Shown here: piece after piece, positions 1,235 through 63,683 of the stretch
Numbering within the stretch: the stretch's first letter is position 1
Layout: each line of letters starts with the position of its first letter
Source of the DNA: Haliotis rufescens
Lineage: Eukaryota
Length of the DNA stretch: 64,000 nt
Assembly (NCBI RefSeq): GCF_023055435.1
Contig: NW_025964024.1
Span: 3,844,001-3,908,000 of the forward strand
Direction of reading: 5' to 3'
Notes under the pieces: model-generated
The model's input: only the letters and a program-made list of their open reading frames with translations
Databases searched by the model: none
Told to the model about the DNA's origin: nothing
Translations under genes and position numbers: made by a program

Positions 1235-1698
1235 CTATGTGTGAATATGAACAGAACAGGTTTTAGTATTTAGTTAAAATTGTGATGCTTTCTGGATGAG
1301 CTGTTAATATAATCTATTGTTAGATGCCATTACTATCTACTCCAACATTCATAGAAGCTCTGACCCAGACAACAGCTCTTTGTTATTCATTGTCCAACAA
1401 AGCAATGAAGAACTGCAATGAGTACAATGTGTAGAGACTTTTCTGTAAAAGTTCTATTTATTTGAAAAATTATTTGTAGGAGAATAACAATTGAGAAATA
1501 TATATTGTATATAAGTAATGAGAAAGCAACAAAAGTGAAAAAACAACATAAATAGATACAAACATATCCAAATTATCTTGAAATATATAATTTATAATTT
1601 CTGAAAATAACTCAAAATTTGAATTAAAATTAATTAAGCCATAACAAAACCAGCTCGACTAAAGGGAGTTAATGCATAATGTGTGATAATAATTGTAC

Positions 1699-3995
1699 CT
1701 GGTTGACACTCAGGAAGCGGGGATGAAGGTGAGGCAGCAGTTGGTGAGGTCAAGGTCACTGGTAGATCTTGAAGGTGAAGGTCGGGTGGGGAGGAAGTGT
1801 TTGAAATGGGATGAAGGGTTTCAGAAGGTACAGAAGTGGCATCAGGGTCATGCCCAGGCACTAAGGGGATGCTGGGGAAATCAGAATCAGACTGAGGAAC
1901 ATTTGCATTATTAATGTCATTCTCTATGCTAACTTGTTTGAGACAGTTAGAAATGTCTTTCTCATTAACCAATTTGTTTCCCTCCAGTGTTTCTTTGGAG
2001 TCCAAGTTGGTATCAGTTTCAGGAACATGAGGTTCGGGAGTTGTTCTGTCATCATCCACATTAGCAACATCATCCTGTGGAAGATCTTCATCACACAGAG
2101 TCTCAGTGCTAGCAGACATTGATGCATCTTGGGAACTAGAGTTCTTGGCAGTGGGAAGCTCTTTAACCGAATCGACAGACAGGGACATATCAAACCACGC
2201 TGAATCCTGCTCCTCACTGGTTGTATCGCTGCTGTTTGTGTCAGCGTTCCCCACAGCACCATCGTCTACCGAGACCAGGATGCTGCTTGTGGGTGTCTGT
2301 CTGTTGGAATGGTCCACAGAACTCATATCACTAAGGCAGGCAGATATGGTGTCAGAGGTTATAGACACTTTGTCCACCGACTCAGTATCACTCTCTTGTT
2401 CAGATGGTTCCTCTTTTGATTGAACAGGTTTGTCTGTAAACCCCTCCGATATCACCTGAAGTTGAAAGGATGTCGGGCTAGCAAGAACCTCTTCAATGTG
2501 CTTTTTCTGCTGTTCTCTCCTTGCCTTCCGAATGGCTGCAGCGGCAGAGCCAGAACTGAGATTGTCGCTGCTGCAGTAACTCTCAATACTTATGTTTGCT
2601 TGGTATATCTTTTCTATTTCCTTATCCAGGTCCTCATCCTCCATTGTGTCATCTAATGCTTCACTTAACTCCGATAATTCATCTTCTTCTGGTTCAGTCC
2701 TTTCTGTGATGACACTAAGGCAGTCGGATAGCTCATCTACTTCCTGTCGCAGGTAGCGCTGTAGAGCATCACTGATATCAACTGGTCCGGAAGCAAAGGG
2801 GTCACCTTCGTCATTGTCGGGTATGAGTCCAATGGTGGACAGATTAGTAACCGTGGCAGCTGATGAGGCAGCTGTTGAAGTCACAGCTGCAGATGGTGAT
2901 GGTTTAACATGTTCTAGTTCACTGTCATCTTTAGACCTCCTAGTCTGTGAATGTTGTGACGGAGGACAAGTAACTTGAGGACGAGACATGGATACAAGCT
3001 GAAATAAGTGCTCGTCATCTATGGTTTCTTCTAAGTGATTGGGTGTAGATGTGGCATCCGGCACATGACCCTCAGTAATATGCTGACATGGATGTGATGG
3101 TTCTGATTTAGTCTCCATAACATCTTCATAGTCTGTTCCTTCGTTCAGACCATGTGCTCTTTTATCATCAGCCCCTTCAGTCTCCTTCATCCCAAAGTGA
3201 TTCTCAGCCTCATTTAACTCCTCTGCTCCAGGAGATGAGGGCTCGCCAGACAACTGGTTCTCCTCTGTCCCTGACAGCTCCCCCGACAACGGCGCCTCCT
3301 GAGAGTGCCTGGGTGACATGTACAGAGGGAACTCTGCTACTTCCATCACATCACTGTCCGACCCACTGCATATGTCAGACTGAGGGGAGGAAGCTGAAGC
3401 AGAAGCAGCATCTCGGGGTACATTCATGGTGGAATCAAGTTGTGTTGCTTTATATGTCTCAATTGCTGGGGCACCTACACCCTCAGAGCTAACATTGGCT
3501 AAACATTCAGGTGTTAATGGTTCATTTTTATGGGCAAGTATGTCATCACTATCTGAATCTAAAGTCTGGAATGGACTCCAGTTTCTGGCCGATGTAAAGT
3601 TGTCAGAAGAGGAAACTGGACATTTATATTGTGCGTGAGCATCAGAGGCAAGGACAGAGGAAGTGGTGACTGTAGACAGAGGTGATATACTTGGGTCAGA
3701 GCTGTCGGACAACTTGTAGGAGTTAGTCAGATAAGAAACGTTTACATCAGAATCAAGTTGGTTATCAAGTGTGTGAGAAAGGTGCTTCTGTGAAGATGTA
3801 GAGGTTACAACAGTTAAGGTGTCTCTATCAAGGAGGTCAGAGTAACGCTCACTATCAAAACAGGCATTATCTACTGGGTTATTGCTGCTAAGTGTTAAAG
3901 GTCGTGCTTCAGCACCTTGATATCTGGCTGTTTCAATATGTGCACTATTCTCTCTACTGCTGGCTATCGTAGTTGATGGTACATCTACAACCTGG
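1699..3995 (-). CDS. Giant exon, 3' part (acidic Ser/Asp/Glu-rich, two LxxIxE motifs)
   Basis: ORF 1634..4096, protein-like from PQVVDVP to PECQP. Probable donor CCAG|GTACAA at 1699 (phase 1), followed by AT-rich intron sequence. Confidence 0.78.
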
Positions 3996-6751
3996 GGCAC
4001 ACATGCTATGTTGGTGTGCAACCGGGTCAGTGGTACTAGCAGGTGATTCAACACCATGCTGCCTTTGCCCTGAAACAGGTTCTGCAGGGGTATCAAAAAG
4101 TTGGCTGCTTTCCGGAACTCTACTGTCTGAAGGATTTACAAAACCACACTGAAAACTACTAATAGGTGTAGGATCACTTGTATTTAAGACAAATAGGTAT
4201 TGGTTTTCTGACCCTGGAATGGAAAGATCCACAACATGGTGAGAACCATGGCCAGAACCTGCATCAGTGCCAGTGAAGTCAATAAGCTGATTATCAAAAC
4301 CATCCTTCACATCAGAGAAAGGGTCAACCAGAGGACCATCTGTCTGAGTTGATTCATCCAGAGGACCATCTGTCTGAGCTGATTCAACCAGAACACCATC
4401 TGTCTGAGCTGATTCAACCAGAGGACCATCTGTCTGAGCTGATTCAACCAAAGGACCATCTGTCTGAGCTGATTCAACCGGAGGACCATCTGTCTGAGCT
4501 GATTCAACCAGAGGACCATCTGTCTGAGTTGATTCAACCAGAGGACCATCTGTCTGAGCTGATTCAACCAGAACACCATCTGTCTGAGCTGATTCAACCA
4601 GAGGACCATCTGTCTGAGCTGATTCAACCAAAGGACCATCTGTCTGAGCTGATTCAACCAAAGGACCATCTGTCTGAGCTGATTCAACCGGAGGACCATC
4701 TGTCTGAGCTGATTCAACCAGAGGACCATCTGTCTGAGCTAATTCAACCAGAGGACCATCTGTCTGAGCTGATTCAACCAGAAGAACATCTGTTTGAGCT
4801 GATTCAACCAGAGGACCATCTGTTTGAGCTGATTCAACCAGAGGACCATATGTCTGACCTGATTCAACCAGAGGACCATCTGTCTGAGCTGATTCAACCA
4901 GAGGACCATCTGTCTGAGCTGATTCAACCAGAGGACCATCTGTCTGAGCTGATTCAACCAGAGGACCATCTGTCTGAGCTGATTCAACCAGAGGACCATC
5001 TGTCTGAGCTGATTCAACCGGAGGACCATCTGTCTGAGTTGTATCAATACCTGGGCTACAACACTGACTGCTGAAAATGTCATCACTCTGCTGACTTGAC
5101 ACTGTGATACGTTGACAGTTCCCCAGACCAGATAATCTGAAGTCCATGTCTCTCAGATCTTCACCTTCTTCATCTTCAGGACAAGAATCTGATCCCATGG
5201 ACTCCATGCACACCATCACAGCAAGCCGAGGATTAGGTTCCCCTAACACAAGTTCACTGGTTCCTATGTCAACAATCACTGGATCATAACCAGGACTCCC
5301 AGAATCACTTGATCCAGTAAAGGATTCCCAAGTCCTTTCTGAAGGACACACTTCTGAGGATTCAAGGGGATCAAATGAACACCTTGTGTCGACCTCCAGC
5401 TGAACAGCAGGTTGACTTGTTTCAGTCTTAGATCCAGTCTTGTGCACATGTTCCACAGATGTCCCTGAAACAGGCTCAACCAAATCAGAACCCTCTGGGA
5501 TCTCAGAGTGTCCATATTGTTGAGACCTATAACCTACAGATGTCCCTGAAACAGGCTCAATCAAATCAGAACCTTCTTGGATCTCAGGGTGTGCATATTG
5601 TTGAGAACCTACGGATGTCCCTGAGACAGGTTCAATCAAATCAGAACCCTCTTGGATCTCAGAGTGTTGACACTGTTCAGACCAATAATCAGTCTTGTCC
5701 ACATGTTCCACAGATGTCCCTGAAACAGGCTCAACCAAATCAGAACCCTCTTGGATCTCAGAGTGTCCATATTGTTGAGACCTATAACCTACAGATGTCC
5801 CTGAGACAGGTTCAATCAAATCAGAACCCTCTTGGATCTCAGAGTGTTGACACTGTTCAGACCAATAATCAGTCTTGTCCACATGTTCCACAGATGTCCC
5901 TGAAACAGGCTCAACCAAATCAGAACCCTCTGGGATCTCAGAGTGTTGACACTGAGGACCACGATGGTGTGGGTGGTTCTGGGGATCAGCTGCATGTGGA
6001 GTTACTGCAAACATGATCTCGGCATGTCTGGGTGATGAAGCTGCAATGGCAACATGAACATCAGAGTTAGCCTGGCTTACCACTGGACTGGGATGAAACC
6101 CAGTGACAGCAGGAACCATGGCTTCCTCTCGTGTCTTCTGGTCTACAACTGTACCATCACTGGTGTCCATCATGTTTTGTTTCTGTCGAATTGACATAGC
6201 AGCAATAGCACCAGTGGAGTATAAATCAGTAGTAAGGTTATCTGGGTCATGCGGTTCATCATAGGACCTGTCTGATTTATGACCCATGAACCCACTATGA
6301 TTATTACCACTATCATTAACGTTTGAATCAATGCAGTCTGCATCAAGAAGCTTTTTATTACTCTGACTTGTTTGATCAGAAGTAGGACCAACAGTGTGAT
6401 TTGACAATAAATCATCATGCATCAAGTGTTGCGAAAGAGTTATCTCCCTTGTGTTAGACTCAGAATTTGAAATATTAGATGGATTATTTATACCACAGAG
6501 AGAATTATCGTGCTCTGAAAGAGATGAGTAAAGGAGTGCAGGAGTAGCCTCCCTTGATTCAGTGGCGTCGGTGAAGTGATGTGGGCTTTCATGCATGAAA
6601 TGGTGAGTTATTGGTAAAGTATTTGGAGGTAGAGTATGTGATGGTTTGCAAAATTCCTCCGTAGCATCAGCTGTGCACTGGGGCCCTCCACCCCCTGCAT
6701 CTGCCCTCCACTCTACAGCACTACACATAGAAGACCCTTCACCAAACTCAT
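3996..6751 (-). CDS. Giant exon, 5' part (acidic, disordered, with two peptide-repeat tracts)
   Basis: ORF 3954..6773. Acceptor TTTGTTTATTTGTCAG|AT at 6751, phase 1. The protein-like frame runs to about 4000 and then switches frame; the left boundary is approximate. Confidence 0.8.
4325..5040 (-). repeat. Coding 30-bp minisatellite, about 24 x PLVESAQTDG
   Basis: Near-identical tandem units GATTCAACCAGAGGACCATCTGTCTGAGCT inside the giant exon. Confidence 0.97.
5440..5956 (-). repeat. Coding variable-length repeat, 7 x core H(S/P)EI(P/Q)EGSDL(V/I)EPVSGTSV
   Basis: Repeated CAGATGTCCCTGAAACAGGCTCAACCAAATCAGAACC with frame-preserving spacers. Confidence 0.93.
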
Positions 6752-7956
6752 CTGACAAATAAACAAACAGCAACTGAATGATAAATACAATTTGGATGAA
6801 TCAAGATGCAGTGATCAAAACACAAACCAGAAAAACAACAAAGAAAATGACGCTATCATCAACTACAAAAATCCACCATTTATAATTACTCTCATACATA
6901 TTTTATCTTATTTATAGCCTATTTATTCAAAAATTCTTTGAGATATTTCATCAAGACCATGAATAGCTGTAATAACTATGATGAGTCTTAAAGCAATATT
7001 TACTAACTCACTTCGAGATAATATACAAAGCTGATTGCAATGAAAACTCTTTGCAAGCTATTATAAAGCAAACAAGCTCAAATTAAAATAAAATGTTATT
7101 AAACATACGATGCAATAATCTGATGTAAGAAATATCCAAACAAAATATGTGCTTTAATACGTGCAAGTAGAAACTACAAATTGCACAAATGGATCCGATG
7201 ACATTAATGCCAAAGCACCATCACTCAACACAACAGCTTGAGTTTTCCTGAACCCACATATAATGCAAAGGTCAGCTATCAGATAAGGATTGTGCTGCCA
7301 TGACATGACATTCTCATATTTCCTTTCCCTATAGGATGTAACAGATACTTTGAAACAAACAGGAAGTCAGGTTAAGAAGAAAATCTTTCTGAAAGCAAAA
7401 TATTATAAAACAACCTGACTCAGCTTAAAAGCTGAAAATAAATACTGAAGATTCAGCCGCAACTGATCAGACAAATACCTGCATGTCTATTATATGTAAT
7501 CTTAACATCTCACTACCAGAAAATGGTATACATGTATGAAAACAAAAAACTGTGTAGACTGCCATCAGGATCCAGCATGTTAAATGGTATCTTGGGTATT
7601 CAAACAAACAAAATTGTAGACTAAATCAGGGTTCATCTGTTAAATTTTCATACAAAATGTGAAAACATATCTTAAGGTGATAAATATGATAACCACATGG
7701 CATGCATTATCAATCCTTTATTTCATCATGCACAAAGCGAACGGTAATGTTCCACATCAATATTCTCGGAATACGAAAATATACAATCAAAGGAATATTC
7801 TCTCATTGTTTTGAACAGGATATTATTGATATTTCTCATGCATTGCTTGTATTGAATAGTTTATAGATTTTATTCCATAATTCTTGTACACCTTTACTCA
7901 ACACCTGCCAGAAACCCCTCCCCCAGGTCATGTTGTGACTGTGAAAACATGTGTGA

Positions 7957-8449: not shown

Positions 8450-9361
8450 GTCTCACTGGTGACGACGATCCACCTGTGGTCCGGCTTGGTTGGAGACGAA
8501 GACGGTTGACACCATTTGAAGGGGTATCCTCTGGTTTGTGTCTTGGGCTATCATGCCCTGACTCCTCCTGGTCGAAACTCTCCCGTTCTAGCGCACGTTT
8601 ACTTGCCATGTCCAGGAGCCTCATTTTGGTGGCTGGGGAAGCTGTGCGGGCAGAGGACATGCTGGAAGTGTCGGACTTCTCAGAGGATGTTCTCCTGACG
8701 ATGCTGGTTTTGTGGTCTGGGGAATGCGACATGTTACAAACTGGAGACACCGGGCTATTGGAAGAAGATGGCTGACTCACCATCAGCTGGTCTTGGGTGC
8801 CTGAGAACCGTTTCGAAAAAATCACAGCCTCTGTCGGGGTCATTTTACGTTTTTCAGGGGACACGGAGTTCCTGGAACGTTCTGTTGAAGCAGACTCTGC
8901 CCCTTCCACTGTCTCTCCACTGTTAGGTTGTGATTCTCCATTAGGCACTTTTCTCTCTGGAGACTCTTTTTGGTCTCGACGCAAGTCAGAGGCACTCTCT
9001 GTCTCAGACAGGTTTTGAGCCAAGATGGCTGCAGAAGTAGACGATACTTGATCCGAGGACTGAGTCTTGGAATCGGCAACATCCATCGGAGTTTCTCCAT
9101 CGGATGATGACCCCGAATCTGAGTCTGAGACATTGTGCCGTCTACATGACACATGTTTTATGTCTTGTTCATCATTATCAGGTACATCTTTACTAGATTT
9201 AAAGGTTTCAAACAAGTTGGACAATCTCTTCTTGTCTGCATTTTTAGGATACCCGACTCGGTCAATGTCCTCTCGACTGGCAGAGTCTTGTCTGGTGACC
9301 CCTCGTTTAGTGTCTGGCACACCATCGCCACTGTCGCCATCACGAGTCTTGGAAACAGTGC
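8450..9361 (-). CDS. Internal exon of the same gene, Ser/Asp/Lys-rich disordered linker
   Basis: Core of ORF 8406..9458. Acceptor TGTTGTTCCAG|GC and donor AGAC|GTGAGT; 912 nt, phase 1-1, compatible with exon 3 and both mini-exons. Confidence 0.85.
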
Positions 9362-16791: not shown

Positions 16792-17509
16792 GGCTCAAGA
16801 AGGTTTACCTTACAGTCATGGCAGTGTTTGCGTTAGTGATTAGCTGGTATGTGTAGGAATCAGTTGGGTAGATCCATCATTCATGTTCTACACATACAAC
16901 AAGACTGGATGCTTACACTCGATAAAGAAGCAAAAAACAATGGCACAGACATGCAAGCCATATCATAGCAGAACTTCTATAAAAACAGACTCTCAGTTCA
17001 AGTGTTCAAACAACAGTATAAAACTTGTAGTCAACAATCAAATACTGGTATACAACAATCAAATACGAAAATGTGTATAAAACAGGCTCGTATCTGCATA
17101 CACCAGTATCTGCCACCATTCACATGTTTTATACAACAATGTGGTACTTGTACACAACAGTCAAGTGATTGTACACAACAAATAAGCCTGCACAACACAT
17201 TTGTTTCTAACTGACTATCATACAACATGACACATAGAGGAAGCAAGGGGTGTACGGCGGTGCATGGGAGCCAGGTTAGGTGCAGTGTTTTCAACTGTGC
17301 ATCTACAGATTGCAAGGAGACAGAGGGAGAGAGTCTCCTAGGCTACAGATGTCTACACTACACGCAATCATCTACCACCATACAAGCACATAGTGTATAA
17401 CGATGGATATCTACTGCCATGCATGGGCCTATACATATATTTCACACAGAGTGTAACATAAAATCTATCTAGCATAAATAAAACCTTCTACTACTACTTA
17501 TGTGTAAAA

Positions 17510-17720
17510 TGATATATCTACTACTACATGTATATAGATAAATATCTACTACATTGTACGACTATATATATATACAAATATCTACTACTACATGTATATA
17601 GACAAATATCTACTACTACAGTACATGTAGAGACAAATATCTACTACTACATGTATATAGACAAATATCTACTACTACATGTATATATACAAACATCTAC
17701 TACTACATATATAGAGACAA
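17510..17720. repeat. ~28-bp minisatellite
   Basis: CTACTACTACATGTATATAGACAAATAT repeated with variation. Confidence 0.85.
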
Positions 17721-18290
17721 AAGAAATTAGTTCAAGAGAAATTCATATAAAAAATGGAAAAGAACAAATTACAACATCAAAATATATTCATAAAAAAATT
17801 GTAAAATATCGTCAACCTTCCCAATACCATTTGATATTGAAGTAAACAACAATTGGAGAATAAATGGCTTGAACCAACCTGTGATTGTGTGGTGATGTAA
17901 GTCCTTCGTGTACACATCGGGAGCTGTCTGTATGTAATCGCGGCCTGTACACGGCAGCAAAATCCACACCATGTGTGAACAGTTTTCAAATGTGACTTTT
18001 CCATATTACCAATAAGTTTATGAATTTTAGATGAAGAAGTTTAACTATGTAACCTTTTTAAGTCTCATTAAGGCATTATATATTATGAAGGATTAACATG
18101 AAATATTCCAGTTTTCTTAAATGGATTTGTAAATTTTGCTCACATTTAAAAGACTACAAAAAAATTACAATAACATATCTTATATTCACCCAAAAGATGA
18201 GAAAATGTAAATTTTTTACCCCAAAAATGTTTTGGTAATAGATTTAAGTTAAGATTTAAGAAAATTAAGTTAAAACAATATCTGGCTTAC

Positions 18291-18318
18291 CGGCACAGCA
18301 GAGTAAAGAGGCAAACAT
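18291..18318 (-). CDS. Putative alternative first coding mini-exon A (MFASLLCCA + G)
   Basis: ATG TTT GCC TCT TTA CTC TGC TGT GCC G|GTAAGC; phase 1. Five nucleotide differences from copy B, none changing the peptide. Confidence 0.75.
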
Positions 18319-19056
18319 ACTGCAGCCGTGAGACAGAACCCACTGGGTCAGTGAATGAATGCTGACTGTTGACTGCTATGCATCACTGCTATTCTAGAGG
18401 TCAAGGCCTGAGTGAGAGTACTGTAAAAAACCTCCCATTCAAACATTGTCCAGATCTTCACACTTCCAACAGTTTCATTGTAGTACGTGGGATCACAAAT
18501 ACCCAGGGGGCAGGTTTGTAGTAATCCTACAGGTCCAGCCAGTTACTGATGATACCTGGCTTGAGGGGATTTAAGCTTTTTCAATTGTTTTATCCCCAGA
18601 CATGCTGTTTGTACAAGCATTTATAGAACAATGGCTTGATTGTTAGAAGTATGCCAGCTTTATCACATCGGCCACTCATTGATTTAATTAAGGCCAGACC
18701 AATTAAATGCTATTGTTTTTATCAGGTCTAAGGAAGCAGCAGCCAAGCTGACTACTTGTCAGATGTTTTAGAATTCACATAGTATTACTCCCTACATCCA
18801 AACCCTGACATTTAACCACACGGTCATGTTTTACTATTATCAGGTAAAAAGTAATTAAACAAACTCATTAACAGGTATGCTTAAATGTTCTTGTCAAGAG
18901 GCTTTTCTACTTTGTATTCAATATGTCATTTAATAATGAGATCCTAATGTCATTATTTACTTTAGCTGATTATTAAAAGTTTTTTTAAAATTCTTATGAA
19001 CACTATAAACACAGTAATACCTCCTGATCAATAAATTTTGTACAAGAAAAATAGTG

Positions 19057-19336
19057 GGTGAGTGAGTTAATTTTAACACCGCTTTTAACAGTATTACAGC
19101 TATATTGCGGCGTGTCAGCTTAATGTTGGAGGAAAGCCCTAAGTGATGCAGGTTTCAGACGTTTACCACTTCGGTGAAACCCATGAGCACGGGTATGGTG
19201 CTAGAAACATAATCAGGGCGACTCGGGATTGAACCCACAATTATAGGTTTCTGGAGTGCCCAAGGGATGCAACTCTGCACAGCGAACAATGCAACAAGGA
19301 TGCAACTCCTTAGACGACTGGGCCACCCGTGCCCCC
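19057..19336 (-). mobile_element. SINE family C (tRNA-Leu-like head with long A-B spacing; tail shared with family A)
   Basis: GGGGCACGGGTGGCCCAGTCGTCTAAGG...GTGGGTTCAATCCCG. Body shared with the copies at about 9500, 12985, 23300 and 29827. Confidence 0.82.
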
Positions 19337-19847
19337 ACAAGAAAAATAAATAGGCCTTGTCTAACTATTAAATATCATAATTCCAAGGTCATAATGATAG
19401 TAATTATAATTAGTAACGGAATATGTTCCTCATTTGTGTATTTGGTTTAACATGCTATTGAAAAAGAATCAAATGATATTTACATTCAATTCTCTGACAA
19501 AATAATTGACTGGTCTGAAAGAACGCAACTGCAGTCATGTTGACATAATGTCTCACTTCAGTCAATAAGAACACACCAGTAAGTGTCACATATTGACTTT
19601 AGTTTGTTCACACGGTACATGCTGCATGCGTAGAGTATGTGGAATGACAATACAAACAAGGGACATGTGTTTGTAGCTGTTCACCAGAGTTAATGTTAAC
19701 ATAGACACATGGTGCAGTGCATCAATCAATAACCGAAGAAAACAACCAAAAAATAACAAAAACTGTGATGCATAATGTACATGCAATAGATGGCTTAGCA
19801 ATACATGCGACATGACATTGTTACAACACAAACAATCAGACAGCCAG

Positions 19848-20112
19848 AACACTGTTATCTATCAGGAACAATGAGGCAGCAATAACACTGTATTATATCA
19901 GGAACAATGAGGAAGCTATAACACTGTTACACACCAGGAACAGTGAGACAGCTGTAACACTGTTATATATCAAGAACAACGAGGCAGATATAACTATTAC
20001 ACACCACAAACAACGAAGCAGCTATAACACTGTTATATATCAGGAACAATGAGGCAGTTATAACACTGTTATATATCAGGAACAATGAGGAAGCTTTAAC
20101 ACTGTTACACAC
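19848..20112. repeat. ~36-bp minisatellite
   Basis: AACACTGTTATATATCAGGAACAATGAGGCAGCTAT repeated about 7 times. Confidence 0.85.
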
Positions 20113-21765
20113 CTGTTGTGTGTGTGTGGCTAGTATCCGATATCACAGTTACACCACATAGATTCATGTTGTGTTTGTGGCTAGCTGTCACAGGAGTCGA
20201 GGCGGGTGCGGAGGCCTGACATATTGGTTCCAGGCCGGTAGGTTTTACCTGCTATCACTCACCAGCTACACATCTTTACACACACACGGTACTAATTAGT
20301 GTACCTACAGGGCAGGGACATTTTCATTTCTGTATTCAATAACTAGGATGTATCTCCATCATCTCAAAACCTTATGGTAAACAGATACAGCAGCGGTCCT
20401 TCATACCTGGTGTGCCTTTATCAGGTTCCTAACCATCAGATAGCCTAAAACAACTCTGGAATGTAAATAGGCTGCAATACATTTGTTTGTTCCAACCACT
20501 ACATTTATTTTGTGTTATGATTAATGACAAAATGCCATTGCCAACATTCCTAACACAAGGGTTCTATGTAACCTTGGATCAGCTTGAAAACTGCTGATTC
20601 AGCATAAAGCAATATTCACTCATTCACCTACACTAACAGTTATTCTCAGAAGCAAAGTTATCTTGTTTAAAAAAGTTTTCTTATCTAAAAATAAATATCT
20701 ACAAAATATAAAATTAGATCCAATGGCGTAAAGAACAATGCTTAATTTCAGGCTAGACTTGAAGTGGATACTTTTTTTAAAGTTTATTTTCTAGGTTCTG
20801 GGAGACCATCATTCACCTACAGCACTTCAAAATTCCAAGCATGGGATGACTTAATTCGAGAATAAAATTTATAAAATTTTAATCTAAAGACACTGCAATA
20901 ACCCAGCTACAAAGCAATGGGCTGTAAAGACTGAAATGATAATTATTGTTAGACATCATGTTATTAAGACCTGACCTATCCAACGTGATGTCCGTTGAAA
21001 GCTGTCAGCCCTAACATGAAGGCAATGAGACCAGATAGCAAGTTGGGTCCAGGGGCGCTAGGGTACCTAGGGATATGGGGTTATCCTAACAACTCTTTCC
21101 GCTCTTTCTGACAATATGTTAGACCCCAGGTGACATTTTTCAAATCATAAATGTTCAGATTGGAGTTAGGTCCTGAAAATCTTTTTGTACAAATTTGTTT
21201 TAAGGAGGCAAGATTTTATATCTGGAGCGTGGGAGCGTGTCTTCAAAAGAAACATGTCTCTCATGTCAAAAGCATGCGAGTGGGCAGGTGACGAACCTGT
21301 GGAGAGCTGGGTACCATATTCCTTCTGTCTGTGATAGCTGTCCCCTGCTGGGTCCGGATAATCAGATGCTACCTTGCCTGTTGACAAACAGCCACAGCCG
21401 CTAATCACCATTTCAATCCAATAATGTGCTTTCCTTGAGCAAACATGCAATTCCTTCTTAAATTCTGTTAATCAAGATAATTAACTTTCATCTTTCAGTT
21501 CTACATTTTAAAAAAATAAAATGATTTGAAATTAATTTCAATATACAAAATCAGTGTTATGGATGATTTATTATAGAGTGTGGTGTTTAAACAGAATTAG
21601 TTATCAGGCAAGTCCCATGTGGACACTCCAACATGATGATAATGGACTCGCAATTTAATCTGTCACATCAATTAGAATTGGGATTAAATTATAGATGCAG
21701 ATATTTGTATTTTTGTTTACTTCAAACAACACAATTTCTTACTTCATAAAGAAAGCCCTACTTAC

Positions 21766-21793
21766 CAGCACAGCACAACAGAGAGGCAAACAT
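21766..21793 (-). CDS. Putative alternative first coding mini-exon B (MFASLLCCA + G)
   Basis: ATG TTT GCC TCT CTG TTG TGC TGT GCT G|GTAAGT. Consensus donor, phase 1, compatible with the acceptor at 9361. Same peptide as the 18291-18318 copy. Confidence 0.75.
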
Positions 21794-22009
21794 GATCACC
21801 CACGACACAAGTATCCAAATATATTGAAATTCAATAAATCACAGCTGACGAAGAACATTCCACGTACATCCAGAGACTATGTTATTTGCAATTTTATTTC
21901 CTATGAGAACGGAGAGGCCATTTGATCTTCTACAGAGCAGGAACTGTCAACGTAGAGGCATGAGGTGAAGCAACAAGTCAAGGCAGGACTACTCTCACTA
22001 ATTGCGTTG

Positions 22010-22095
22010 GCTCTCATGACGTGAGGACTTGTACCACACAGGTGTGTTTGTCATCCTGCAGTTTCCACAGGTCATGTGACTGTGACAGCTGGCCA
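22010..22095. promoter_or_regulatory. Candidate promoter motifs upstream of mini-exon B (CRE-like, E-boxes, M-box)
   Basis: ATGACGTG (about 22016), CAGGTG, GTCATGTGAC (22071-22080) and CAGCTG are clustered 220-300 bp upstream of the ATG. Motif evidence only. Confidence 0.3.
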
Positions 22096-22228
22096 CATCG
22101 CCCACCGACCAACGTAAAATGATTGACATGATTGATTTTAACACAGTACTTGCAGTATCTATGTCTTCATTAATTTGGGATCAGAATGAATATCAATCAT
22201 AACCTAATCACAAGTTGGTATTGGGTGT

Positions 22229-22777
22229 GGAGTCAGTCACACTCACTAAAACGGACATCATGTTCTCCTAACCATTGGTTTCAATGGAGAGTCAGTCACG
22301 CTTACTAAAATGGACATCATGTTCTCCTAACAACCGGTTTCAATAAAGATTCTGTCACACTCACTAAAACAGACATCATGTTCTCCCAACAACTGGTTTC
22401 AATAAAGAGTCAGTCACACTCACTATAATGGACATTATGTTCTCCTAACAACTGGTTTCAATGAAGAGTCAGTCACACTCACTATAATGGACATTATGTT
22501 CTCCTGATAACTGGTTTCAGTGAAGAGTAAGTCACATTCACTATTATCGACATCATGTTCTCCCAACAACTGGTTTCAATGAAGAGTCAGTCACACTCAC
22601 TATAATGGACATCATGTTCTCCTAACAACTGGTTTCAATGAAGAGTCAGTCACACTCACTATAATGGACATTATGTTCTCCTGATAACTGGTTTCAGTGA
22701 AGAGTAAGTCACATTCACTATTATCGACATCATGTTCTCCTAACAACTGGTTTCAGTGAAGAGTCAGTCACACTCAA
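22229..22777. repeat. 59-bp minisatellite, about 9 copies
   Basis: GAGTCAGTCACACTCACTATAATGGACATCATGTTCTCCTAACAACTGGTTTCAATGAA units. Confidence 0.93.
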
Positions 22778-23299
22778 TAGGCCTGCATGTAGTGGGAGGG
22801 AGGCCCTAATACTGAGTCCGAAGCATCTCTTGCTTGAAGTTTCTCCATGGAACTGATAAATTCATGAAGAGCGACGACTTGAAATCAAGACATGCTGCAT
22901 AAATCTGCATCTCTTGTTGCAGTCATCAAACGGCCATCCATCAACAGATGACAGTTCGATGCTTTCATGTTTTCCACTATAAAAACATCATCCTGTTCTT
23001 TAGGCTAAATATCACCATGACAACAAGTATCCCATGTGCACAACAACCGCAGCACTTGTCATAGCCTGTAGTAGCATGCAGAGACAATGACCATCAGCAC
23101 CACCAAGCCTATGTATGGCAGTATACTGCGGACACGGCAAGTTGACAGCACATACTGCAGTCTTCACAACCAATAACTTCATTATTGATTCACTGAACTT
23201 ATTGCTACGAAACCAAAAAGAAGGTTTGTCAACACAGCACACCATATCTCTGAACTTCAGATTCATGTCGAGGCTTATGGTTGCAGAGGCATGCCTGTG

Positions 23300-26093: not shown

Positions 26094-27810
26094 TAGGCAA
26101 CAAATTCAGTATGTGTTGTACATGTTGACAACAGATTCAGTCTAAGTTAAACATGTTGGCAACAGATTCAGTCTGTGTTTTACATGTTGGCAACAGATTC
26201 AGTCTGTGTTTTACATGTTGGCAACAGATTCAGTCTGTGTTAGACATGTTGGCAACAGATTCAGTCTGTGTTTTACATGTTGGCAACAGATTCAGTCTGA
26301 GTTTTACATGTTGGCAACAGATTCAGTCTGTGTTTTACATGTTGGCAACAGATTCAGTCTGTGTTTTACATGTTGGCAACAGATTCAGTCTGTGTTTTAC
26401 ATGTTGGCAACAGATTCAGTCTGTGTTAGACATGTTGGCAACAGATTCAGTCTGAGTTGTACATGTTGGCAACAGATTCAGTCCAGGTTAAACATGTTGG
26501 CAACAGATTCAGTCTGTGTTTTACATGTTGGCAACAGATTCAGTCTGTGTTTTACATGTTGACAACAGATTCAGTCTGTGTTTTACATGTTGGCAACAGA
26601 TTCAGTCTGTGTTTTACATGTTGGCAACAGATTCAGTCTGTGTTTTACATGTTGGCAACAGATTCAGTCTGAGTTGTACATGTTGGCAACAGATTCAGTC
26701 TGAGTTGTACATGTTGGCAACAAATTCAGTCTGTGTTGTACATGTTGACAACAGATTCAGTCTTAGTTAAACATGTTGGCAACAGATTCAGTCTGTGTTT
26801 TACATGTTGGCAACAGATTCAGTCTGAGTTGTACATGTTGGCAACAGATTCAGTCCAGGTTAAACATGTTGGCAACAATTTCAGTCTGTGTTTTACATGT
26901 TGGCAACAGATTCAGTCTGTGTTGTACATGTTGGCAACAGATTCAGTTCATGTTGTACACGAAGGCAACATATTCAGTCCATGTTGTACATGTTGGCAAC
27001 AGATTCAGTCTGTGTTGTACATGTTGGTAACAGATTTGGTCTATGTTGTACATGTTGGCAACAGATTCAGTCTGTGTTGTACATGTTGGCAACAGATTCA
27101 GTCTGTGTTGTACATGTTGGCAACAGATTCAGTCTAAGTTAAACATGTTGGCAACAGATTCAGTCTAAGTTAAACATGTTGGCAACAGATTCAGTCCATG
27201 TTGTACATGTTGGTAACAGATTCAGTCTGTGTTGTACATGTTGGCAACAGATTCAGTCTGTGTTGTACATGTTGGTAACAGATTTGGTCTATGTTGTACA
27301 TGTTGGCAACAGATTCAGTCTGTGTTGTACAATGTTGGCAACAGATTCAGTCCATGTTGTACATGTTGGCAACAGATTCAGTCTAAGTTAAACATGTTGG
27401 CAACAGATTCAGTCTAAGTTAAACATGTTGGCAACAGATTCAGTCCATGTTGTACATGTTGGTAACAGATTCAGTCTGTGTTGTACATGTTGGCAACAGA
27501 TTCAGTCTGTGTTGTACATGTTGGCAACAGATTCAGTCCATGTTGTACATGTTGGCAACAGATTCAGTCTAAGTTAAACATGTTGGCAACAGATTCAGTC
27601 CATGTTGTGCATGTTGGCAACAGATTCAGTCTGTGTTGTACATGTTGGCAACAGAGTCAATCTGTGTTTAATGTTGGCAACAGATTCAGTCAATGTTATA
27701 CATGTTGGCAACAGATTCAGTCCATGTTGTACATGTTGGCAACAGATTTGGTCCATGTTGTACATGTTGGAAGTAGATTCAGTTCATGTTGTACATGTTG
27801 GCAACAGATA
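26094..27810. repeat. 31-bp minisatellite, about 55 copies
   Basis: CATGTTGGCAACAGATTCAGTCTGTGTT(T/G)TA; period 31 (26152, 26183). Confidence 0.97.
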
Positions 27811-28294
27811 TAACATATTCATGCTAAACATGTCGCTAACAGATTCATGTTATATGTCGATAACAGAGTTATGCATTACATACTCCTATTTGATATATTT
27901 CGTATCCCCCAGACACCAGTAACCCATGACCTCCAGCAGTCAATGTCATGCTGCATGTCATGATGGCCTGACTTGGCCGAGTCATCATTCACACACGTTC
28001 CAGACAGTAGTTAGGGTGTTTTAATCAATACAGCACAATTAGTCAATAGATGAAGATGCAGGCAGGACATGGCTGGATGCAAGAAGCTCATGTAACAGTA
28101 GAATAGGCACCACGAAATGAATAAATAGTTCTCTTTGTCTCTGTATTCTCTCTAAAAACTAGAGCGAAACACTGTTATGAAAATTCCTCTCAAGGAGGGT
28201 AGGGTATATCATTCATCATACGTTTCACCAGTCTGTTCTTTGCATCTGGACATCACTGTTTAACTGTAAACATCAAACAATAGATCATATGCAG

Positions 28295-40155: not shown

Positions 40156-41176
40156 TGTTGGTGCGGAGTAAGTCTTGGCCGGCGCACACCATATTGCTCA
40201 ATGACAATCCCTGCAACTTGATGATAAAACAAGAGTGCAGTGTACACACACAGAGAGACTACAAATACGTCATCACTCAAACCATGACTTGAAATCAATA
40301 TGGTGCTTTATAGTCACTGAAACATGCATTACGTCTTCAGTATTACTTTCAATAGACTGCCCCCTTGATACAACCTGGCCTACTGATCATTGTCACTAGA
40401 CAATACAGTGTATTGAGAAACATCATTGCCTGCCAGCACTCATTCTGGCCTACATTATACAAAATACCCAATAAAACATGTCCGACCTAAGTGCTTAACA
40501 AGACATCACCTCAATGAGTTGCAAAATGTACTGGTATATTTGCTTGCTTTTTTTCTGCCACATTCCATTTTTCCTATGTTTCAAAGTGTAGCAACAAATC
40601 TGTGTAGAAATGATATTCATTATAGATGATGCTTCCGACAAAAGCAAGAACATTGGTCTTTCCTGTTGGTTTCACAATAGGATGAACAATCCTTTTTATT
40701 CTAATGGACTGTTGTCATCTTGATGTCATATTTCATTTTATGAATCTGGTAATATTGTGCACGGTGACCTATCATCCCACAGATTCGAACATTAAGATTT
40801 GTTGCCAGACAGGACCAAAGGCACAGTAACGTACTGCGCCTGTGGTAATCTAGTGGAATTTACCAAGAGACGGAAATACTGATTCAACTCTCCCAGACTG
40901 TATACAACACTATTAAACTTCCAGTCAACTGCATGAGTTTCTCAATCACAACGCATCAAGACAATCAAACCTGTGATGGAAAAGTTAGCTGTGTCGCTGC
41001 CTGCATGAACTAATTCATCCTTAAATATAATAGTCGAGGATAGATCCAGGTCTTCATTGCCAGACGCAATAATTTTGCCAACTAACAGTATTCCAGCCGT
41101 ATCATGGTGTGTCAGCTTATATAGGTGGAGAGTCAGTCATGCAGAAGATTAGTGACACCGACAAGTAAAAGGTATT

Positions 41177-43673: not shown

Positions 43674-45709
43674 AACTATTCCTGTTAATATGGTCAAATA
43701 TTGTTTTTAGTGTTTGTCATTAATAAAAAGCCATCAGAAATTCAAGGTTAAAGATGCAATTGTCCCATATCTGATGAAAAGTAAACAATCATAATGGTTG
43801 CTATCCACTAAACATTTTTTAGCTGATCTGAATAAATACACACATCTTCATTCAATTCACAACCAGTTTGCCATTACTATTTCCCATGTGGCCATGGGTT
43901 TTTACGCTCCCCCTCCAAGCCTGCCCCTGCTAGAGCCTGTTGTAACTCTATATACCGGTACATTGCCTGGTCCCTACCTGTGGCTGTGGCAGCCTCAACA
44001 ATCAGCATCCGGAAACGCTCAAGCATCATGGCAGCCGATCTGCCCCTTTGGAACTGCCATGAATTCACTGGTCCATCTTGTCACAAGTACTCACACATGG
44101 CGTACAGTTTGTTGTCACTGAGAACACCGACCACTTGCCATCACAGAGGAAGCAGGCCTGACCATAACCTAGATACATCCACACACCTGATTGGCTGATT
44201 GGTCTGTAAGGAAGCAGAAACTGTCGTCTGCTGGCTGCCCAACACTGAACATGGAATCAGGCTGTCCGCCCTGAGGGATGGACATCGGTTACATAACAAA
44301 CAACAAGTCTTTGCCAGTGAGAAGAGAAACAGTAATCAATTAATCAGGACTACAATGGCTGATCCTCCGAGACACTCTCTGGCAGAGATGGAGCCAATGT
44401 CCTAGGATTCCGTCCTACTCTCCCCAAATCAATCAATATCGTTTTGTCAAATCAACACACAGGCACACGCACATGCGTCTGCTTCAGAAGGTGCCCACCG
44501 TCATATCTCGTTAGCTGATACCAGACGCCACTATTCATATATTCTTCCACTAATCTGATCAGGTCATATCCGACATGGTGGCCACTTGACTACATGTCAA
44601 AGGGCAGTCTTATCCATGTATGCAGGCGGCTTGGTAATTAATATCTTAATACCAATAAGAGGAAAAAACATAACATTAAGCTGAACATTACGCTTGTATA
44701 TTCATGAAAGTAACTAGCTTAAGGATCAAGGTAATCAATAAACTGGCATTAAAACAGGATCTTAAAGAAATTATCAAGGATGTCTACGGAGGCCAGTCAA
44801 TTATCGTTTGGCATTCCGTGAATTAAGACATTTGGAACTAATTCCATCAGGCATTTATCACGCTCTGGAGAATCAGTGTAATTTCATTATTACCCGAACA
44901 GGATGCTTTGATGGTATAGTTGTGAGAAAGTGCATGTTTGACTACAGTCAATCTGATCGATACAACTCGTAACACCGGAAACAGGCTTGAAGAATTGTCC
45001 ACCTTGATTACAGAAATAAAAGGTCATCATTGTTTTTGTTCAGAGCTGCTGTTTATGAAAGTTCTATTTGTCATGTGTCACCAAGTCCCAGGCTGCAAAA
45101 CTCTCTCTCACATGAGCAAACTCCATAAATAACAATCATCTTCAAACAGACGTCTATCTTGTCCCATATTGCTGATGAACAATTCTATGGCACAACGAGA
45201 TATTAAACTTTAACAAGCTCCCAAGTGCTTAATAAGCCTACTGCATTGACAAATGTCTTCTTTCACAATGACCTGACTGAGTCATTCAAATAGAAAGTTG
45301 GTCGTTCTTCTCAACAAAAAAGGTTTTCTTCCCTTTAAGGAGCTTACTAATGGTAGGTGGATTCAGCTCAGTGAAGACATTAATAAGCTGTATTGACATG
45401 GGAATGTCTGCGTGATACACAGCGTATTCCATACTAACAAGCTGTATGTTTGACACCGTGGTGGAAAGTCCTATACATGGACCATAAAAACTTAGAAATA
45501 TATATTGATCTTAATTAGTATTGAAAGGAAAACATTCTCTTTCTGTATCATGGTTCAATAATTGTAACTAATGTTGCCATGGAACACTGCTTTCCTCATC
45601 GATTATTACAATAATGTTATAGAAATCATTGTCAAATAATTGATACTTGTGAAATTATAATGGTAATTGTGTTAAATGTGTCAATACTGAGGTATACATT
45701 CATATAGTG

Positions 45710-56736: not shown

Positions 56737-56855
56737 CATTGGAGAGACTATGTCTGAGTGATGCCTTCACCAAGTCGATGCCACTCTGCGATTGTCTTCG
56801 CTTTTCATTATTGACGTTGTCTTGAATCCACTCCCCTGTTAAACCCTTGAGTTGC
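56737..56855 (-). CDS. SYTL4/SYTL5-like: Synaptotagmin-like Rab effector, exon 3 (SHD2: QLKGLTGEWIQDNVNNEKRRQSQSGIDLVKASLRHSLSN)
   Basis: Acceptor TTCTTCCAG|G and donor AATG|GTAAGT; 119 nt, phase 2-1. TGEW and GxDLVxxSL motifs follow the Zn finger as in Slp4/5. Confidence 0.9.
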
Positions 56856-57187: not shown

Positions 57188-57920
57188 TTCGTCTCCAAAT
57201 GGGGATTCCAGATCTGAATAGGTCCCCAGTACCCCAAGCTTGGCACCAAAGGATATTCTGGTTCAGAATTAGTCCCCAATCCCCTTATGCTTGTCTCCCA
57301 GGGGGAATTCTGGACCAGAATAGGTCCCCAGTACCCCATGCTTGTCTCCCAGTGGGGATTGAGGATCAGAATTAGTCCCCAGTCCCCTTATGCTTGTCTC
57401 CCAGGGGGAATTCTGGGACAGAATAGGTCCCCAGTACCTCATGCTTGTCTCCCAGTGGGGATTTAGGATCAGAATTGGTCCCCACTGTCCGGACAGAAAA
57501 ATTTAAATGTCCGGTAAGCAATATTTTAAACCGGACATTTGAGATTCCCAATCGGACATGTCCGGCGCATATGACGGATTCAGGACCCCTGGTCCCCAGT
57601 ACCCCATGCGTGTCTCCCAAAGGGGATTTAGGATCAGAATAGGTCTCCAGCACCCCATGCATGTCTCCCAAAGGGGATTTAGGATCAGAATAGGTCTCCA
57701 GCACCCCATGCATGTCTCCCAAAGGGGATTTAGGATCAGAATAGGTCTCCAGCACCCCATGCGTGTCTCCCAAAGGGGATTTAGGATCAGAATAGGTCTC
57801 CAGCACCCCATGCATGTCTCCCAAAGGGGATTTAGGATCAGAATAGGTCTCCAGCACCCCATGCATGTCTCCCAAAGGGGATTCTCGCTCAAAATTGGTC
57901 CCCAGTAACCATGCTTGTCA
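57188..57920 (+). repeat. 51-bp tandem array derived from the 5' end of the headless SINE-like element, interrupted at about 57485-57591
   Basis: Unit GGGGATTTAGGATCAGAATAGGTC(C/T)CCAG(C/T)ACCCCATGC(A/T/G)TGTCTCCCA; period 51 (57631, 57682). Confidence 0.9.
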
Positions 57921-59003: not shown

Positions 59004-59216
59004 ACTTGCTTATAGCAGAGAGTGCAGAGCCATTTCCCTGTCAACAGACTCTCACGGCAGACGCCACACACTCGGAACTTGCACTGGGAGCAGACGTCAC
59101 CTGTGTTGAAGATGAACCCGAATGGTTTGTGACATCGTGCACAGATCTTGTTGAGGTCATCGCCGTCACGGATCACACTCTGAAGTCTCAGGTTGTGTAT
59201 CTCACTCCGTAGCTGA
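59004..59216 (-). CDS. SYTL4/SYTL5-like: Synaptotagmin-like Rab effector, exon 2 (FYVE-like Zn finger of the SHD)
   Basis: Acceptor TTTTGCTTCCACAG|T and donor CAAGT|GTAAGT; 213 nt, phase 2-2, in frame with exon 1. It contains CARC...CSQC...CGVC...WLCTLC (four CxxC pairs), as in the Slp4/Slp5/rabphilin Rab-binding domain. Confidence 0.93.
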
Positions 59217-63563: not shown

Positions 63564-63573
63564 TGCCTCCTAC

Positions 63574-63683
63574 CTGGCTCTCGTGTCCTGTTCTTTCCGT
63601 AGTTCCTCATCCCGTCGTATCACACTCAGTATGAGCGTCTTCTCCTCCTCCGTCAAACCCTCCATATCAATCATCTCCTCCAT
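63574..63683 (-). CDS. SYTL4/SYTL5-like: Synaptotagmin-like Rab effector, first coding exon (SHD1 helix: MEEMIDMEGLTEEEKTLILSVIRRDEELRKEQDTRA)
   Basis: Manual translation from ATG at 63683. It matches the Slp-homology-domain pattern L(S/T)xxExxxILxVLxRDxxLRxxE and ends AG|GTAGGA (phase 2). Too short for the ORF track. Confidence 0.9.

What the first reader, a model, noticed from the sequence alone, without database searches (positions are those of the whole stretch)
18291..21793. Twin hidden 28-nt exons encoding an identical di-cysteine N-terminus (MFASLLCCA): a Rab-binding versus lipid-anchor switch
Seen: two minus-strand ATG...G|GTAAG units 3.5 kb apart in the 47-kb intron (21793-21766 and 18318-18291). 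They differ at 5 of 28 nt (CTG/TTA, TTG/CTC, GCT/GCC) yet encode the same peptide. Their flanks show no evident similarity, and both end in phase 1, matching the acceptor at 9361 to give MFASLLCCAGTVSK... Established: Slp proteins reach membranes through the Rab27-binding SHD, SHD-less isoforms exist, and an N-terminal hydrophobic CC motif is a typical S-palmitoylation signal. Inference: a duplicated alternative first exon kept under purifying selection lets two independent promoters make the same Rab-independent, acylated isoform. Both exons are invisible to the ORF track.
Basis: partly seen in the sequence, partly recalled or inferred. Interest (0 to 1): 0.9.

Follow-up and report, generated by a model that had tools for sequence, protein, structure and literature searches.

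The report
Twin Cys-Cys first exons of abalone Slp
The two 28-base exons are real alternative first exons of the red abalone synaptotagmin-like protein 2 gene, giving forms that lack the Rab-binding domain and start with a probable fat-anchoring Cys-Cys peptide, but the public RefSeq annotation already lists them.

Summary
Two minus-strand ATG...G|GTAAG units lie at 21793-21766 and 18318-18291. They differ at 5 of 28 bases and both encode MFASLLCCA. They are the only two copies in the 1.33-Gb genome, and their flanks do not align.

The window is Haliotis rufescens, and the gene is synaptotagmin-like protein 2. It has FYVE_2/SHD exons at 59 and 56.8 kb, a 47-kb intron, and tandem C2 exons downstream of the window.

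The exons are not hidden.
- A1 plus an 81-nt cassette at 21377-21297, annotated as X6.
- B1 plus a 66-nt cassette at 17944-17879, annotated as X7.

So the two starts mostly make different N-termini, not one isoform. A third alternative first exon lies at 44029-43978 (X8).

H. cracherodii and H. rubra carry the same modules. Batillaria and Nucella Slp models start MLASLLCCDG and MLSSLLCCNG.

Synonymous sites are near saturation with no amino-acid change, which points to strong selection on the peptide. Palmitoylation is plausible, with Syt-17 as precedent, but it is untested. Direct RNA evidence here is thin.

The parts
21766..21793 (-). A1: upstream twin first coding exon (coding part). Encodes MFASLLCCA plus the first base of a Gly codon; donor GTAAGT.
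   Evidence: Sequence. Unique pattern hits. Matches residues 1-10 of RefSeq X9/X6.
21297..21377 (-). A2: 81-nt phase-1/phase-1 cassette exon specific to module A. Encodes 26 residues, KVASDY...QLST. Acceptor is ...CAACAG, donor GTTCGT.
   Evidence: Sequence, translation. Present in H. rufescens X6, H. cracherodii X5 and H. rubra X1. The 98-nt contig of run X1 lies on 21296-21371, and 22 further letters leave the genome at the donor (table 8, record 8).
18291..18318 (-). B1: downstream twin first coding exon. Same peptide, 5 synonymous differences, donor GTAAGC.
   Evidence: The bin depths of run X1 fit a contig ending at the donor, which is an inference (table 2).
17879..17944 (-). B2: 66-nt phase-1/phase-1 cassette exon specific to module B. 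Encodes RDYIQTAPDVYTKDLHHHTIT. Acceptor is ...GTACAG, donor GTTGGT.
   Evidence: Sequence, translation. Present in H. rufescens X7, H. cracherodii X6 and H. rubra X2.
43978..44029 (-). C1: third alternative first coding exon in the same intron. Encodes MMLERFRMLIVEAATAT plus G, phase 1, donor GTAGGG. It contains no Cys.
   Evidence: Sequence. Matches RefSeq X8 (H. rufescens), X7 (H. cracherodii) and X3 (H. rubra).
8450..9361 (-). Common exon 2 (912 nt, enters and leaves in phase 1). It is the shared acceptor for the SHD2, A1, A2, B1, B2 and C1 donors.
   Evidence: Residues 11-313 of X9 map exactly to 9359-8451.
56737..56855 (-). SHD2 exon, the last exon of the Rab-binding domain. It ends AAT G|GTAAGT in phase 1.
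   Evidence: The junction ...SLSN-G-TVSK is seen in SHD isoforms X3, X4 and X5.
59004..59216 (-). FYVE_2 zinc-finger exon of the SHD.
   Evidence: Pfam PF02318, E = 3.2e-9 on the exon alone and 9.9e-20 on full isoform X3.
1700..3391 (-). Linker exon used by X6-X9 after exon 2, through an internal acceptor inside the large 1634-4096 ORF.
   Evidence: Residues 315-878 of X9 map exactly here.

Best explanation
The two 28-nt units are the coding parts of two tandemly duplicated alternative first exons (A1, B1) of the Haliotis rufescens synaptotagmin-like protein 2 gene. They sit inside the 47-kb intron that separates the Rab27-binding SHD exons from the rest of the gene.

Each unit belongs to a two-exon module. 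The module is a first exon (5' UTR plus MFASLLCCA-G), an intron of about 350-390 nt, and a module-specific cassette exon in phase 1/1 (A2 or B2). All donors are phase 1 and feed the common acceptor at 9361.

Transcripts that start at A1 or B1 cannot contain the SHD. They encode proteins of about 1,320-1,350 aa that keep the linker and both C2 domains. These proteins begin MFASLLCCAG, with or without a 21- or 26-residue insert carrying a DY...D.Y motif.

Shown here: the exon anatomy; the uniqueness of the units; their synonymous-only divergence; exact matches to RefSeq isoforms X6, X7 and X9; conservation in two other Haliotis species; and conservation of the M-[FL]-[AS]-S-L-L-C-C-x-G start in two caenogastropods.

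Inferred:
- Each module has its own promoter.
- The hydrophobic stretch plus Cys-Cys is S-palmitoylated, replacing Rab27-dependent vesicle recruitment by a lipid anchor, as the N-terminal Cys cluster does in Syt-17. I put this at about 0.55.
- The duplication persists because the two copies divided up promoter use and cassette sequence between them.
For: Uniqueness: there are 2 hits in the window against 0.00 expected, and 2 hits in the 1.33-Gb genome.

The duplication is old and the peptide is constrained. Only 33 nt align between the modules. Of about 5.8 synonymous sites, 4-5 differ (pS 0.69-0.86), and none of the 9 residues differs.

Gene identity: FYVE_2 on the 59-kb exon, C2A and C2B exons downstream, and 'synaptotagmin-like protein 2 [Haliotis rufescens]' on a contig of exactly the length of C246.

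Annotated isoforms: X6 is A1+A2, X7 is B1+B2, and X9 is the direct join. X9 maps exactly onto the window. X6-X9 carry two C2 domains and no FYVE_2, while X3 carries both.

Both first exons are used. In H. rubra, X1 starts MIM-FASLLCCAG and continues with A2, while X2 starts M-FASLLCCAG and continues with B2.

Deep conservation: Batillaria KAG5711102 starts MLASLLCCDG-RFSSDYTDY, and a Nucella model starts MLSSLLCCNG-RISSDYTDY.

RNA: the contig of run X1 covers A2 and leaves the genome exactly at its donor. The X1 bin depths fit one contig of depth about 6.2 lying on about 18354-18290 and 17944-17878.

Precedent for a tandem-C2 protein anchored by acylated N-terminal cysteines: Syt-17 (PMC6684635).
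Against: The RefSeq isoforms are Gnomon models, and their RNA support could not be inspected here. Annotations of sister species may borrow evidence from one another.

My single read-laying run was swamped by a high-copy SINE at 19079-19340. As a result no junction A1->A2, B1->B2 or mini-exon->9361 was displayed. The runs are only guessed to be RNA, and low-level intronic coverage is common across the stretch.

No start-site data exist, and B1 is preceded by a possible acceptor (...CTGCAG|T ATG). An upstream non-coding exon is therefore not excluded.

Palmitoylation is untested. With only two cysteines and a 9-residue hydrophobic stretch, other roles are possible.
Confidence: 0.8

Rival explanations
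1. The exons are real and the peptide is conserved, but its role is not lipid anchoring. MFASLLCCAG could instead act as a short hydrophobic membrane-insertion or amphipathic tag. It could also be a protein-protein docking or degradation (N-terminal) signal, or a redox or metal-binding Cys pair.
For: Selection acts on the peptide rather than the nucleotides, which fits any peptide-level function. The neighbouring conserved DY...D.Y motif in A2, B2, Batillaria and Nucella suggests a larger N-terminal interaction module.
Against: A hydrophobic stretch immediately before Cys-Cys, close to the N-terminus of a cytosolic membrane-trafficking protein, is the classic context for DHHC-type S-acylation. 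Syt-17 shows this solution within the tandem-C2 superfamily. The Cys-Cys pair is invariant from Haliotis to Nucella, while residues 2, 3 and 9 vary.
Confidence: 0.25
2. The N-terminus is a very short cleavable signal peptide or signal anchor that sends these isoforms into the secretory pathway.
For: FASLLCCAG is a 9-residue uncharged stretch, and C-A-G resembles a small-residue -3/-1 cleavage site. This is from inspection.
Against: Only 10 residues precede a polar, charged sequence, and there is no positively charged n-region. The rest of the protein (linker plus two C2 domains) is typical of cytosolic peripheral membrane proteins and is shared with the SHD isoforms, which bind a cytosolic Rab. 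No signal-peptide predictor was available.
Confidence: 0.04
3. One or both mini-exons are annotation artefacts. On this view they are gene-model starts proposed by Gnomon from weak evidence and propagated between species, and are rarely or never transcribed.
For: No junction read was seen directly here. Coverage near the units is low and comparable to intronic background.
Against: Unexpressed DNA would not keep 9 of 9 residues with saturated synonymous sites while every flanking base has diverged. The same start occurs in independently annotated Batillaria and Nucella proteins. The X1 contig covers A2 alone and leaves the genome at its donor.
Confidence: 0.05

Closest known systems
SHD-less isoforms of Slp genes (mammalian Slp2-b/c/d and Slp3-b; Drosophila bitesize isoforms)
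   Same: One Slp gene produces forms both with and without the N-terminal Rab27-binding SHD, while keeping the C-terminal tandem C2 domains. The reference is Fukuda, Saegusa & Mikoshiba 2001, listed in PMC2329822. That these isoforms lack the SHD is from my own knowledge. Multiple Btsz isoforms are described in PMC10153138.
   Different: Here the SHD-less forms start with a conserved Cys-Cys peptide. The first exon also exists in two tandem copies, each with its own cassette exon. I found no report of an acylated Slp N-terminus.
Synaptotagmin-17 (B/K protein)
   Same: It is a tandem-C2 protein without a transmembrane domain. It attaches to membranes through fatty-acylated cysteines near its N-terminus (PMC6684635, citing Fukuda & Mikoshiba 2001).
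   Different: Syt-17 has a patch of seven cysteines and is a separate gene, not an alternative-promoter isoform. No sequence homology of the N-termini was shown, and acylation of the abalone peptide is untested.
GAP-43-type N-terminal dual-cysteine palmitoylation motifs
   Same: A Cys-Cys pair lies within the first 10 residues, next to hydrophobic residues, and the motif is encoded by a small first exon (own knowledge).
   Different: GAP-43 has Cys3-Cys4 followed by basic residues. Here it is Cys7-Cys8, preceded by FASLL and followed by acidic, Tyr-rich or polar sequence.
Tandem arrays of alternative first exons with their own promoters (e.g. clustered protocadherins, UGT1A)
   Same: Duplicated first exons, each with an ATG and a donor, join a common downstream acceptor in the same phase.
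   Different: In those arrays the first exons are large and diversified. Here the first exon is 28 coding bases and kept identical in protein, and the diversification sits in a second small cassette exon.

Membership tests
Synaptotagmin-like protein (Slp/SYTL) family | N-terminal Slp homology domain with a FYVE_2-type zinc finger (Rab27-binding) | tested here: met
   PF02318 scores E = 3.2e-9 on exon 59216-59004 and 9.9e-20 on RefSeq isoform X3. The feature is absent by construction from the isoforms that start at A1, B1 or C1.
Synaptotagmin-like protein (Slp/SYTL) family | C-terminal tandem C2A-C2B domains, no transmembrane domain | tested here: met
   Two PF00168 stretches, E about 5e-50, in X3, X6, X7, X8 and X9. 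The C2 exons are seen downstream of the window in L003 and L006.
Synaptotagmin-like protein (Slp/SYTL) family | Binding of Rab27 by the SHD | not testable with these tools
   Inferred only from the domain match.
Alternative first exons (alternative promoters) | Own start codon and donor, same phase as the common acceptor, mutually exclusive with upstream coding exons | tested here: met
   A1, B1 and C1 each begin with ATG and end in phase 1, as does the SHD2 exon. RefSeq models use each of them as the first coding exon.
Alternative first exons (alternative promoters) | Independent transcription start sites upstream of each exon | tested here: inconclusive
   The contigs of runs X12 and X14 lie on 21796-22061, upstream of A1. 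The X1 bin depths suggest a contig starting near 18354, upstream of B1. These are contigs of runs only guessed to be RNA, and there are no CAGE or 5'RACE data.
Alternative first exons (alternative promoters) | Spliced reads joining the exon to the downstream exon | tested here: inconclusive
   Only the A2 donor is seen directly, through record 8 of run X1. The joints table was filled by SINE-derived joints, so no junction from A1 or B1 was displayed.
N-terminally S-palmitoylated peripheral membrane proteins (Syt-17 / GAP-43 type) | Cysteine(s) near the N-terminus in a hydrophobic context, no transmembrane segment | tested here: met
   Cys7-Cys8 follow F-A-S-L-L. The pair is invariant in Haliotis, Batillaria and Nucella.
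N-terminally S-palmitoylated peripheral membrane proteins (Syt-17 / GAP-43 type) | Thioester-linked fatty acid on those cysteines, and Cys-dependent membrane localisation | not testable with these tools
   Needs acyl-biotin exchange or metabolic labelling, and CC->SS mutants.
Cleavable signal peptide | Positively charged n-region, h-region of 7-15 residues, total length usually 16-30 residues | tested here: not met
   By inspection only. There is no basic residue, 10 residues in total precede polar sequence, and the protein is otherwise of a cytosolic domain type.

The most novel reading that the evidence does not exclude
The M-[FL]-[AS]-S-L-L-C-C-x-G first exon plus the DY...D.Y second exon is an ancient, gastropod-wide (possibly wider) module. 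It turns Slp from a Rab27 effector into a constitutively lipid-anchored tandem-C2 tether. In abalone the module was duplicated, and the two copies were kept for tens of millions of years because their promoters and cassette exons took on different roles. That would make it a natural, testable case of a 'Rab-dependent versus acyl-dependent' recruitment switch within one gene.
Probability: 0.4. Interest if true: 0.45.

Novelty: new member of a known kind. Interest (0 to 1): 0.3.

Why it matters
If the Cys-Cys start is acylated, one invertebrate Slp gene would offer two ways of reaching membranes: by Rab27 through the SHD, or by a lipid anchor. Promoter choice would select between them. This mirrors what vertebrates do with separate genes, Slp versus Syt-17.

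The twin exons are also a clean small example of purifying selection that is visible only at the peptide level. Synonymous sites are saturated and the flanks are randomised.

For the scan, the main lesson is that the feature is already in the RefSeq annotation. What is new is limited to the module structure, the selection argument and the functional hypothesis.

Tried and rejected
(1), read laying on 17300-23299 with four runs. The output tables were dominated by a high-copy SINE at about 19079-19340, with depths up to 5e5. The joints and loose-end tables therefore showed none of the junctions of interest. Only scattered pieces and bin depths could be used.

(2), the search for homologous proteins with exon 2. 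It gave one distant hit only, because the length window (175-556 aa) excludes the full-length isoforms.

(3), the look-up of encoding contigs for the H. rubra protein. Exon duplication in the caenogastropods and nucleotide-level conservation across species are therefore untested.

(4) Dispersed-repeat explanation. Rejected, because the genome has only two copies.

(5) Recent duplication or gene conversion. Rejected, because pS is 0.69-0.86 and the flanks do not align.

Comparisons used database protein ids and single exons by reference.

(8) Literature search for an acylated Slp. It found nothing that links the synaptotagmin-like protein family with palmitoylation.
Full report
**Observation.**
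On the minus strand, 21793-21766 and 18318-18291 each read ATG plus 25 nt and are followed by GTAAG. They differ at five positions (CTG/TTA, TTG/CTC, GCT/GCC), and both translate to MFASLLCCA plus the first base of a Gly codon. The acceptor before 9361 completes GGC and continues TVSK. A degenerate back-translation of the peptide plus GGT hits only these two sites in the window, against 0.00 expected from 100 shuffles. It also hits only these two sites in the whole 1.33-Gb assembly. The flanks do not align. A sensitive local comparison of 2.2 kb around each unit recovers only the 33-nt block, which is the exon plus GTAAG.

**The gene.**
The exon at 59216-59004 carries a FYVE_2 zinc finger (PF02318). 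The exon at 56855-56737 ends AAT G|GTAAGT in phase 1. The next common exon is 9361-8450, so the intron is 47.4 kb. C2A and C2B exons lie downstream of the window. A profile-free HMMER search with exon 2 and a word-based search led to 'synaptotagmin-like protein 2 [Haliotis rufescens]'. That protein is encoded on a contig of 6,146,994 bp, exactly the length of the window's contig C246. The window is therefore red abalone, and the gene is its annotated SYTL2-like gene.

**The exons are already annotated, and they are two-exon modules.**
The 90%-identity cluster of that protein contains these H. rufescens isoforms:
- X9 (XP_046334037.2) starts MFASLLCCAG and joins directly to TVSK.
- X6 (XP_046334034.2) starts MFASLLCCAG, adds 26 residues (KVASDY...QLST), then joins G-TVSK.
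- X7 (XP_046334035.2) starts MFASLLCCAG, adds 21 residues (RDYIQT...HTIT), then joins G-TVSK.
- X8 (XP_046334036.2) starts MMLERFRMLIVEAATAT and joins G-TVSK.
- X3, X4 and X5 start with the SHD.

X9 maps residue for residue to 21793-21764 (equally to unit B), 9359-8451 and 3391-1700. The inserts are encoded in the window. A2 is 21377-21297 (81 nt), 388 nt downstream of A1's donor. B2 is 17944-17879 (66 nt), 346 nt downstream of B1's donor. Both enter and leave in phase 1. The X8 start is an exon at 44029-43978. What was duplicated is thus a first exon plus a cassette exon. The two starts mostly yield different N-termini, with the direct join as a third, annotated option. X6-X9 have two C2 domains and no FYVE_2, while X3 has both. 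The SHD-less reading therefore holds at the level of the models.

**Conservation.**
H. cracherodii isoforms X5, X6 and X7 repeat the A, B and C starts. In H. rubra, X1 is MIM-FASLLCCAG plus the A2 homologue, X2 is M-FASLLCCAG plus the B2 homologue, and X3 has the C start. The extra MI on only the A form implies that the two H. rubra models start at different first exons. In the window the corresponding codon is GTG. The duplication therefore predates the split of these abalone lineages.

Outside the genus, Batillaria attramentaria KAG5711102 starts MLASLLCCDG-RFSSDYTDY, and a Nucella lapillus model starts MLSSLLCCNG-RISSDYTDY. Both models carry C2 domains. The consensus is M-[FL]-[AS]-S-L-L-C-C-x-G, followed by a basic residue and a DY...D.Y motif that A2 and B2 also contain. 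The Lottia model has a different N-terminus. Taxa beyond gastropods could not be tested.

**Selection.**
Over the eight codons after ATG there are about 5.8 synonymous and 18.2 non-synonymous sites. All five differences can be placed on synonymous paths. Nei-Gojobori path averaging gives 4 synonymous and 1 non-synonymous step, with pS 0.69, and the parsimonious path gives 0.86. Synonymous sites are thus near saturation, in line with the unalignable introns and flanks, yet 9 of 9 residues are identical. A2 and B2, by contrast, keep only a sparse motif. The constraint is on the peptide, not on the DNA, and it is much stronger on the first exon than on the cassette.

**RNA evidence (weak).**
Twenty public runs hold exon 2. 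Fourteen of them have transcriptome-like sizes but are only guessed to be RNA. I laid four of these on 17300-23299. The tables were flooded by a high-copy SINE at about 19079-19340. Three pieces were usable.
- Run X1 record 8 is 98 nt. It lies on 21296-21371, inside A2, with no mismatch. Its remaining 22 letters leave the genome at the A2 donor. The one-base overhang is the G shared by the intron and by the next exon.
- The bin depths of X1 (0.32 and 1.70 around 18300; 0.69 and 1.39 around 17900) fit one contig of depth about 6.2 on roughly 18354-18290 and 17944-17878. That would be B1 with about 36 nt of 5' UTR, spliced to B2. This is my inference from the bins, not a displayed joint.
- Contigs of X12 and X14 lie on 21796-22061, upstream of A1. 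Similar low coverage occurs elsewhere in the intron, so this is not specific.

No start-site data exist. B1 is preceded by ...CTGCAG|T, a possible acceptor, so an upstream non-coding exon is not excluded.

**Mechanism.**
By gene structure, a transcript that starts at A1 or B1 cannot include the SHD, and its product keeps the phosphoinositide-binding C2 pair. A hydrophobic FASLL stretch followed by an invariant Cys-Cys, a few residues from the N-terminus of a cytosolic trafficking protein, is the usual context for S-acylation. Within the tandem-C2 superfamily, Syt-17 lacks a transmembrane domain and depends on fatty-acylated N-terminal cysteines for membrane association and function (PMC6684635). 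I therefore rate palmitoyl anchoring as the most likely role, at about 0.55. Another peptide-level function comes second, at about 0.25. A signal peptide is unlikely: only 10 residues, no basic n-region, and cytosolic domains. The idea that the two copies persist through divided promoter use and cassette divergence is inference.

**Comparison with the known.**
SHD-less Slp isoforms are established in mammals (Fukuda et al. 2001, listed in PMC2329822; the content is from my own knowledge). Multiple Btsz isoforms are known in Drosophila (PMC10153138). Acylated N-terminal Cys anchors on C2 proteins are also known, in Syt-17. A search for papers linking Slp proteins to palmitoylation found none. 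The exons themselves are in RefSeq. I file it as a new member of known kinds, of modest interest.

**Limits.**
- Gnomon support levels could not be seen.

Noticed in passing
window 43978-44029 (-): A third alternative first coding exon lies in the same 47-kb intron. It encodes MMLERFRMLIVEAATAT plus G, ends in phase 1 and has donor GTAGGG. It is annotated as isoform X8 in H. rufescens, X7 in H. cracherodii and X3 in H. rubra. It has no cysteine, so the gene has at least four alternative N-termini.
   Followed up: partly
window ~19079-19340: A high-copy SINE-like element lies between the two modules. Contigs of all four runs pile up on it to summed depths of 1e5-5e5, with many internal 'joints'. 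It swamped the read-laying tables.
   Followed up: no
window 3954-6773 (-) and 1634-4096 (-): Two very large open frames of 939 and 820 aa overlap in different frames at 3954-4096. The first holds about 35 tandem copies of a 10-residue SAQTDGPLVE-like unit and several copies of a unit of about 35 residues. Isoforms X6-X9 skip all of 6773-3392 and enter at an internal acceptor near 3391. The H. rubra model reads through a homologous stretch and stops inside it.
   Followed up: partly
window 21797-21799 (-) versus H. rubra X1: The H. rubra A-type isoform begins MIM-FASLLCCAG. In the window the codon two positions upstream of the ATG is GTG. The start codon of module A has therefore shifted by two residues between species.
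   Followed up: no
window 18319-18340 (-): B1's ATG is directly preceded by a pyrimidine-rich tract and CAG (...TTCTGTCTCACGGCTGCAG|T ATG), which is a possible 3' splice site. A1 has nothing comparable. An Inr-like TCATTC sits at about 18353-18358, near the start of the inferred X1 contig.
   Followed up: no
window 41125-43675, 26153-27920, 57372-57908, 62253-63602: There are several long minisatellite or low-complexity arrays inside the 47-kb intron and upstream of the SHD exons. They produce long spurious ORFs on both strands.
   Followed up: no
H. rubra LOC124290579 (P0002, P0010, P0011): The H. rubra models are named 'uncharacterized protein'. They end at ...THKK inside the linker exon and have no precomputed Pfam domain on record. 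The gene is probably split or truncated in that annotation.
   Followed up: no
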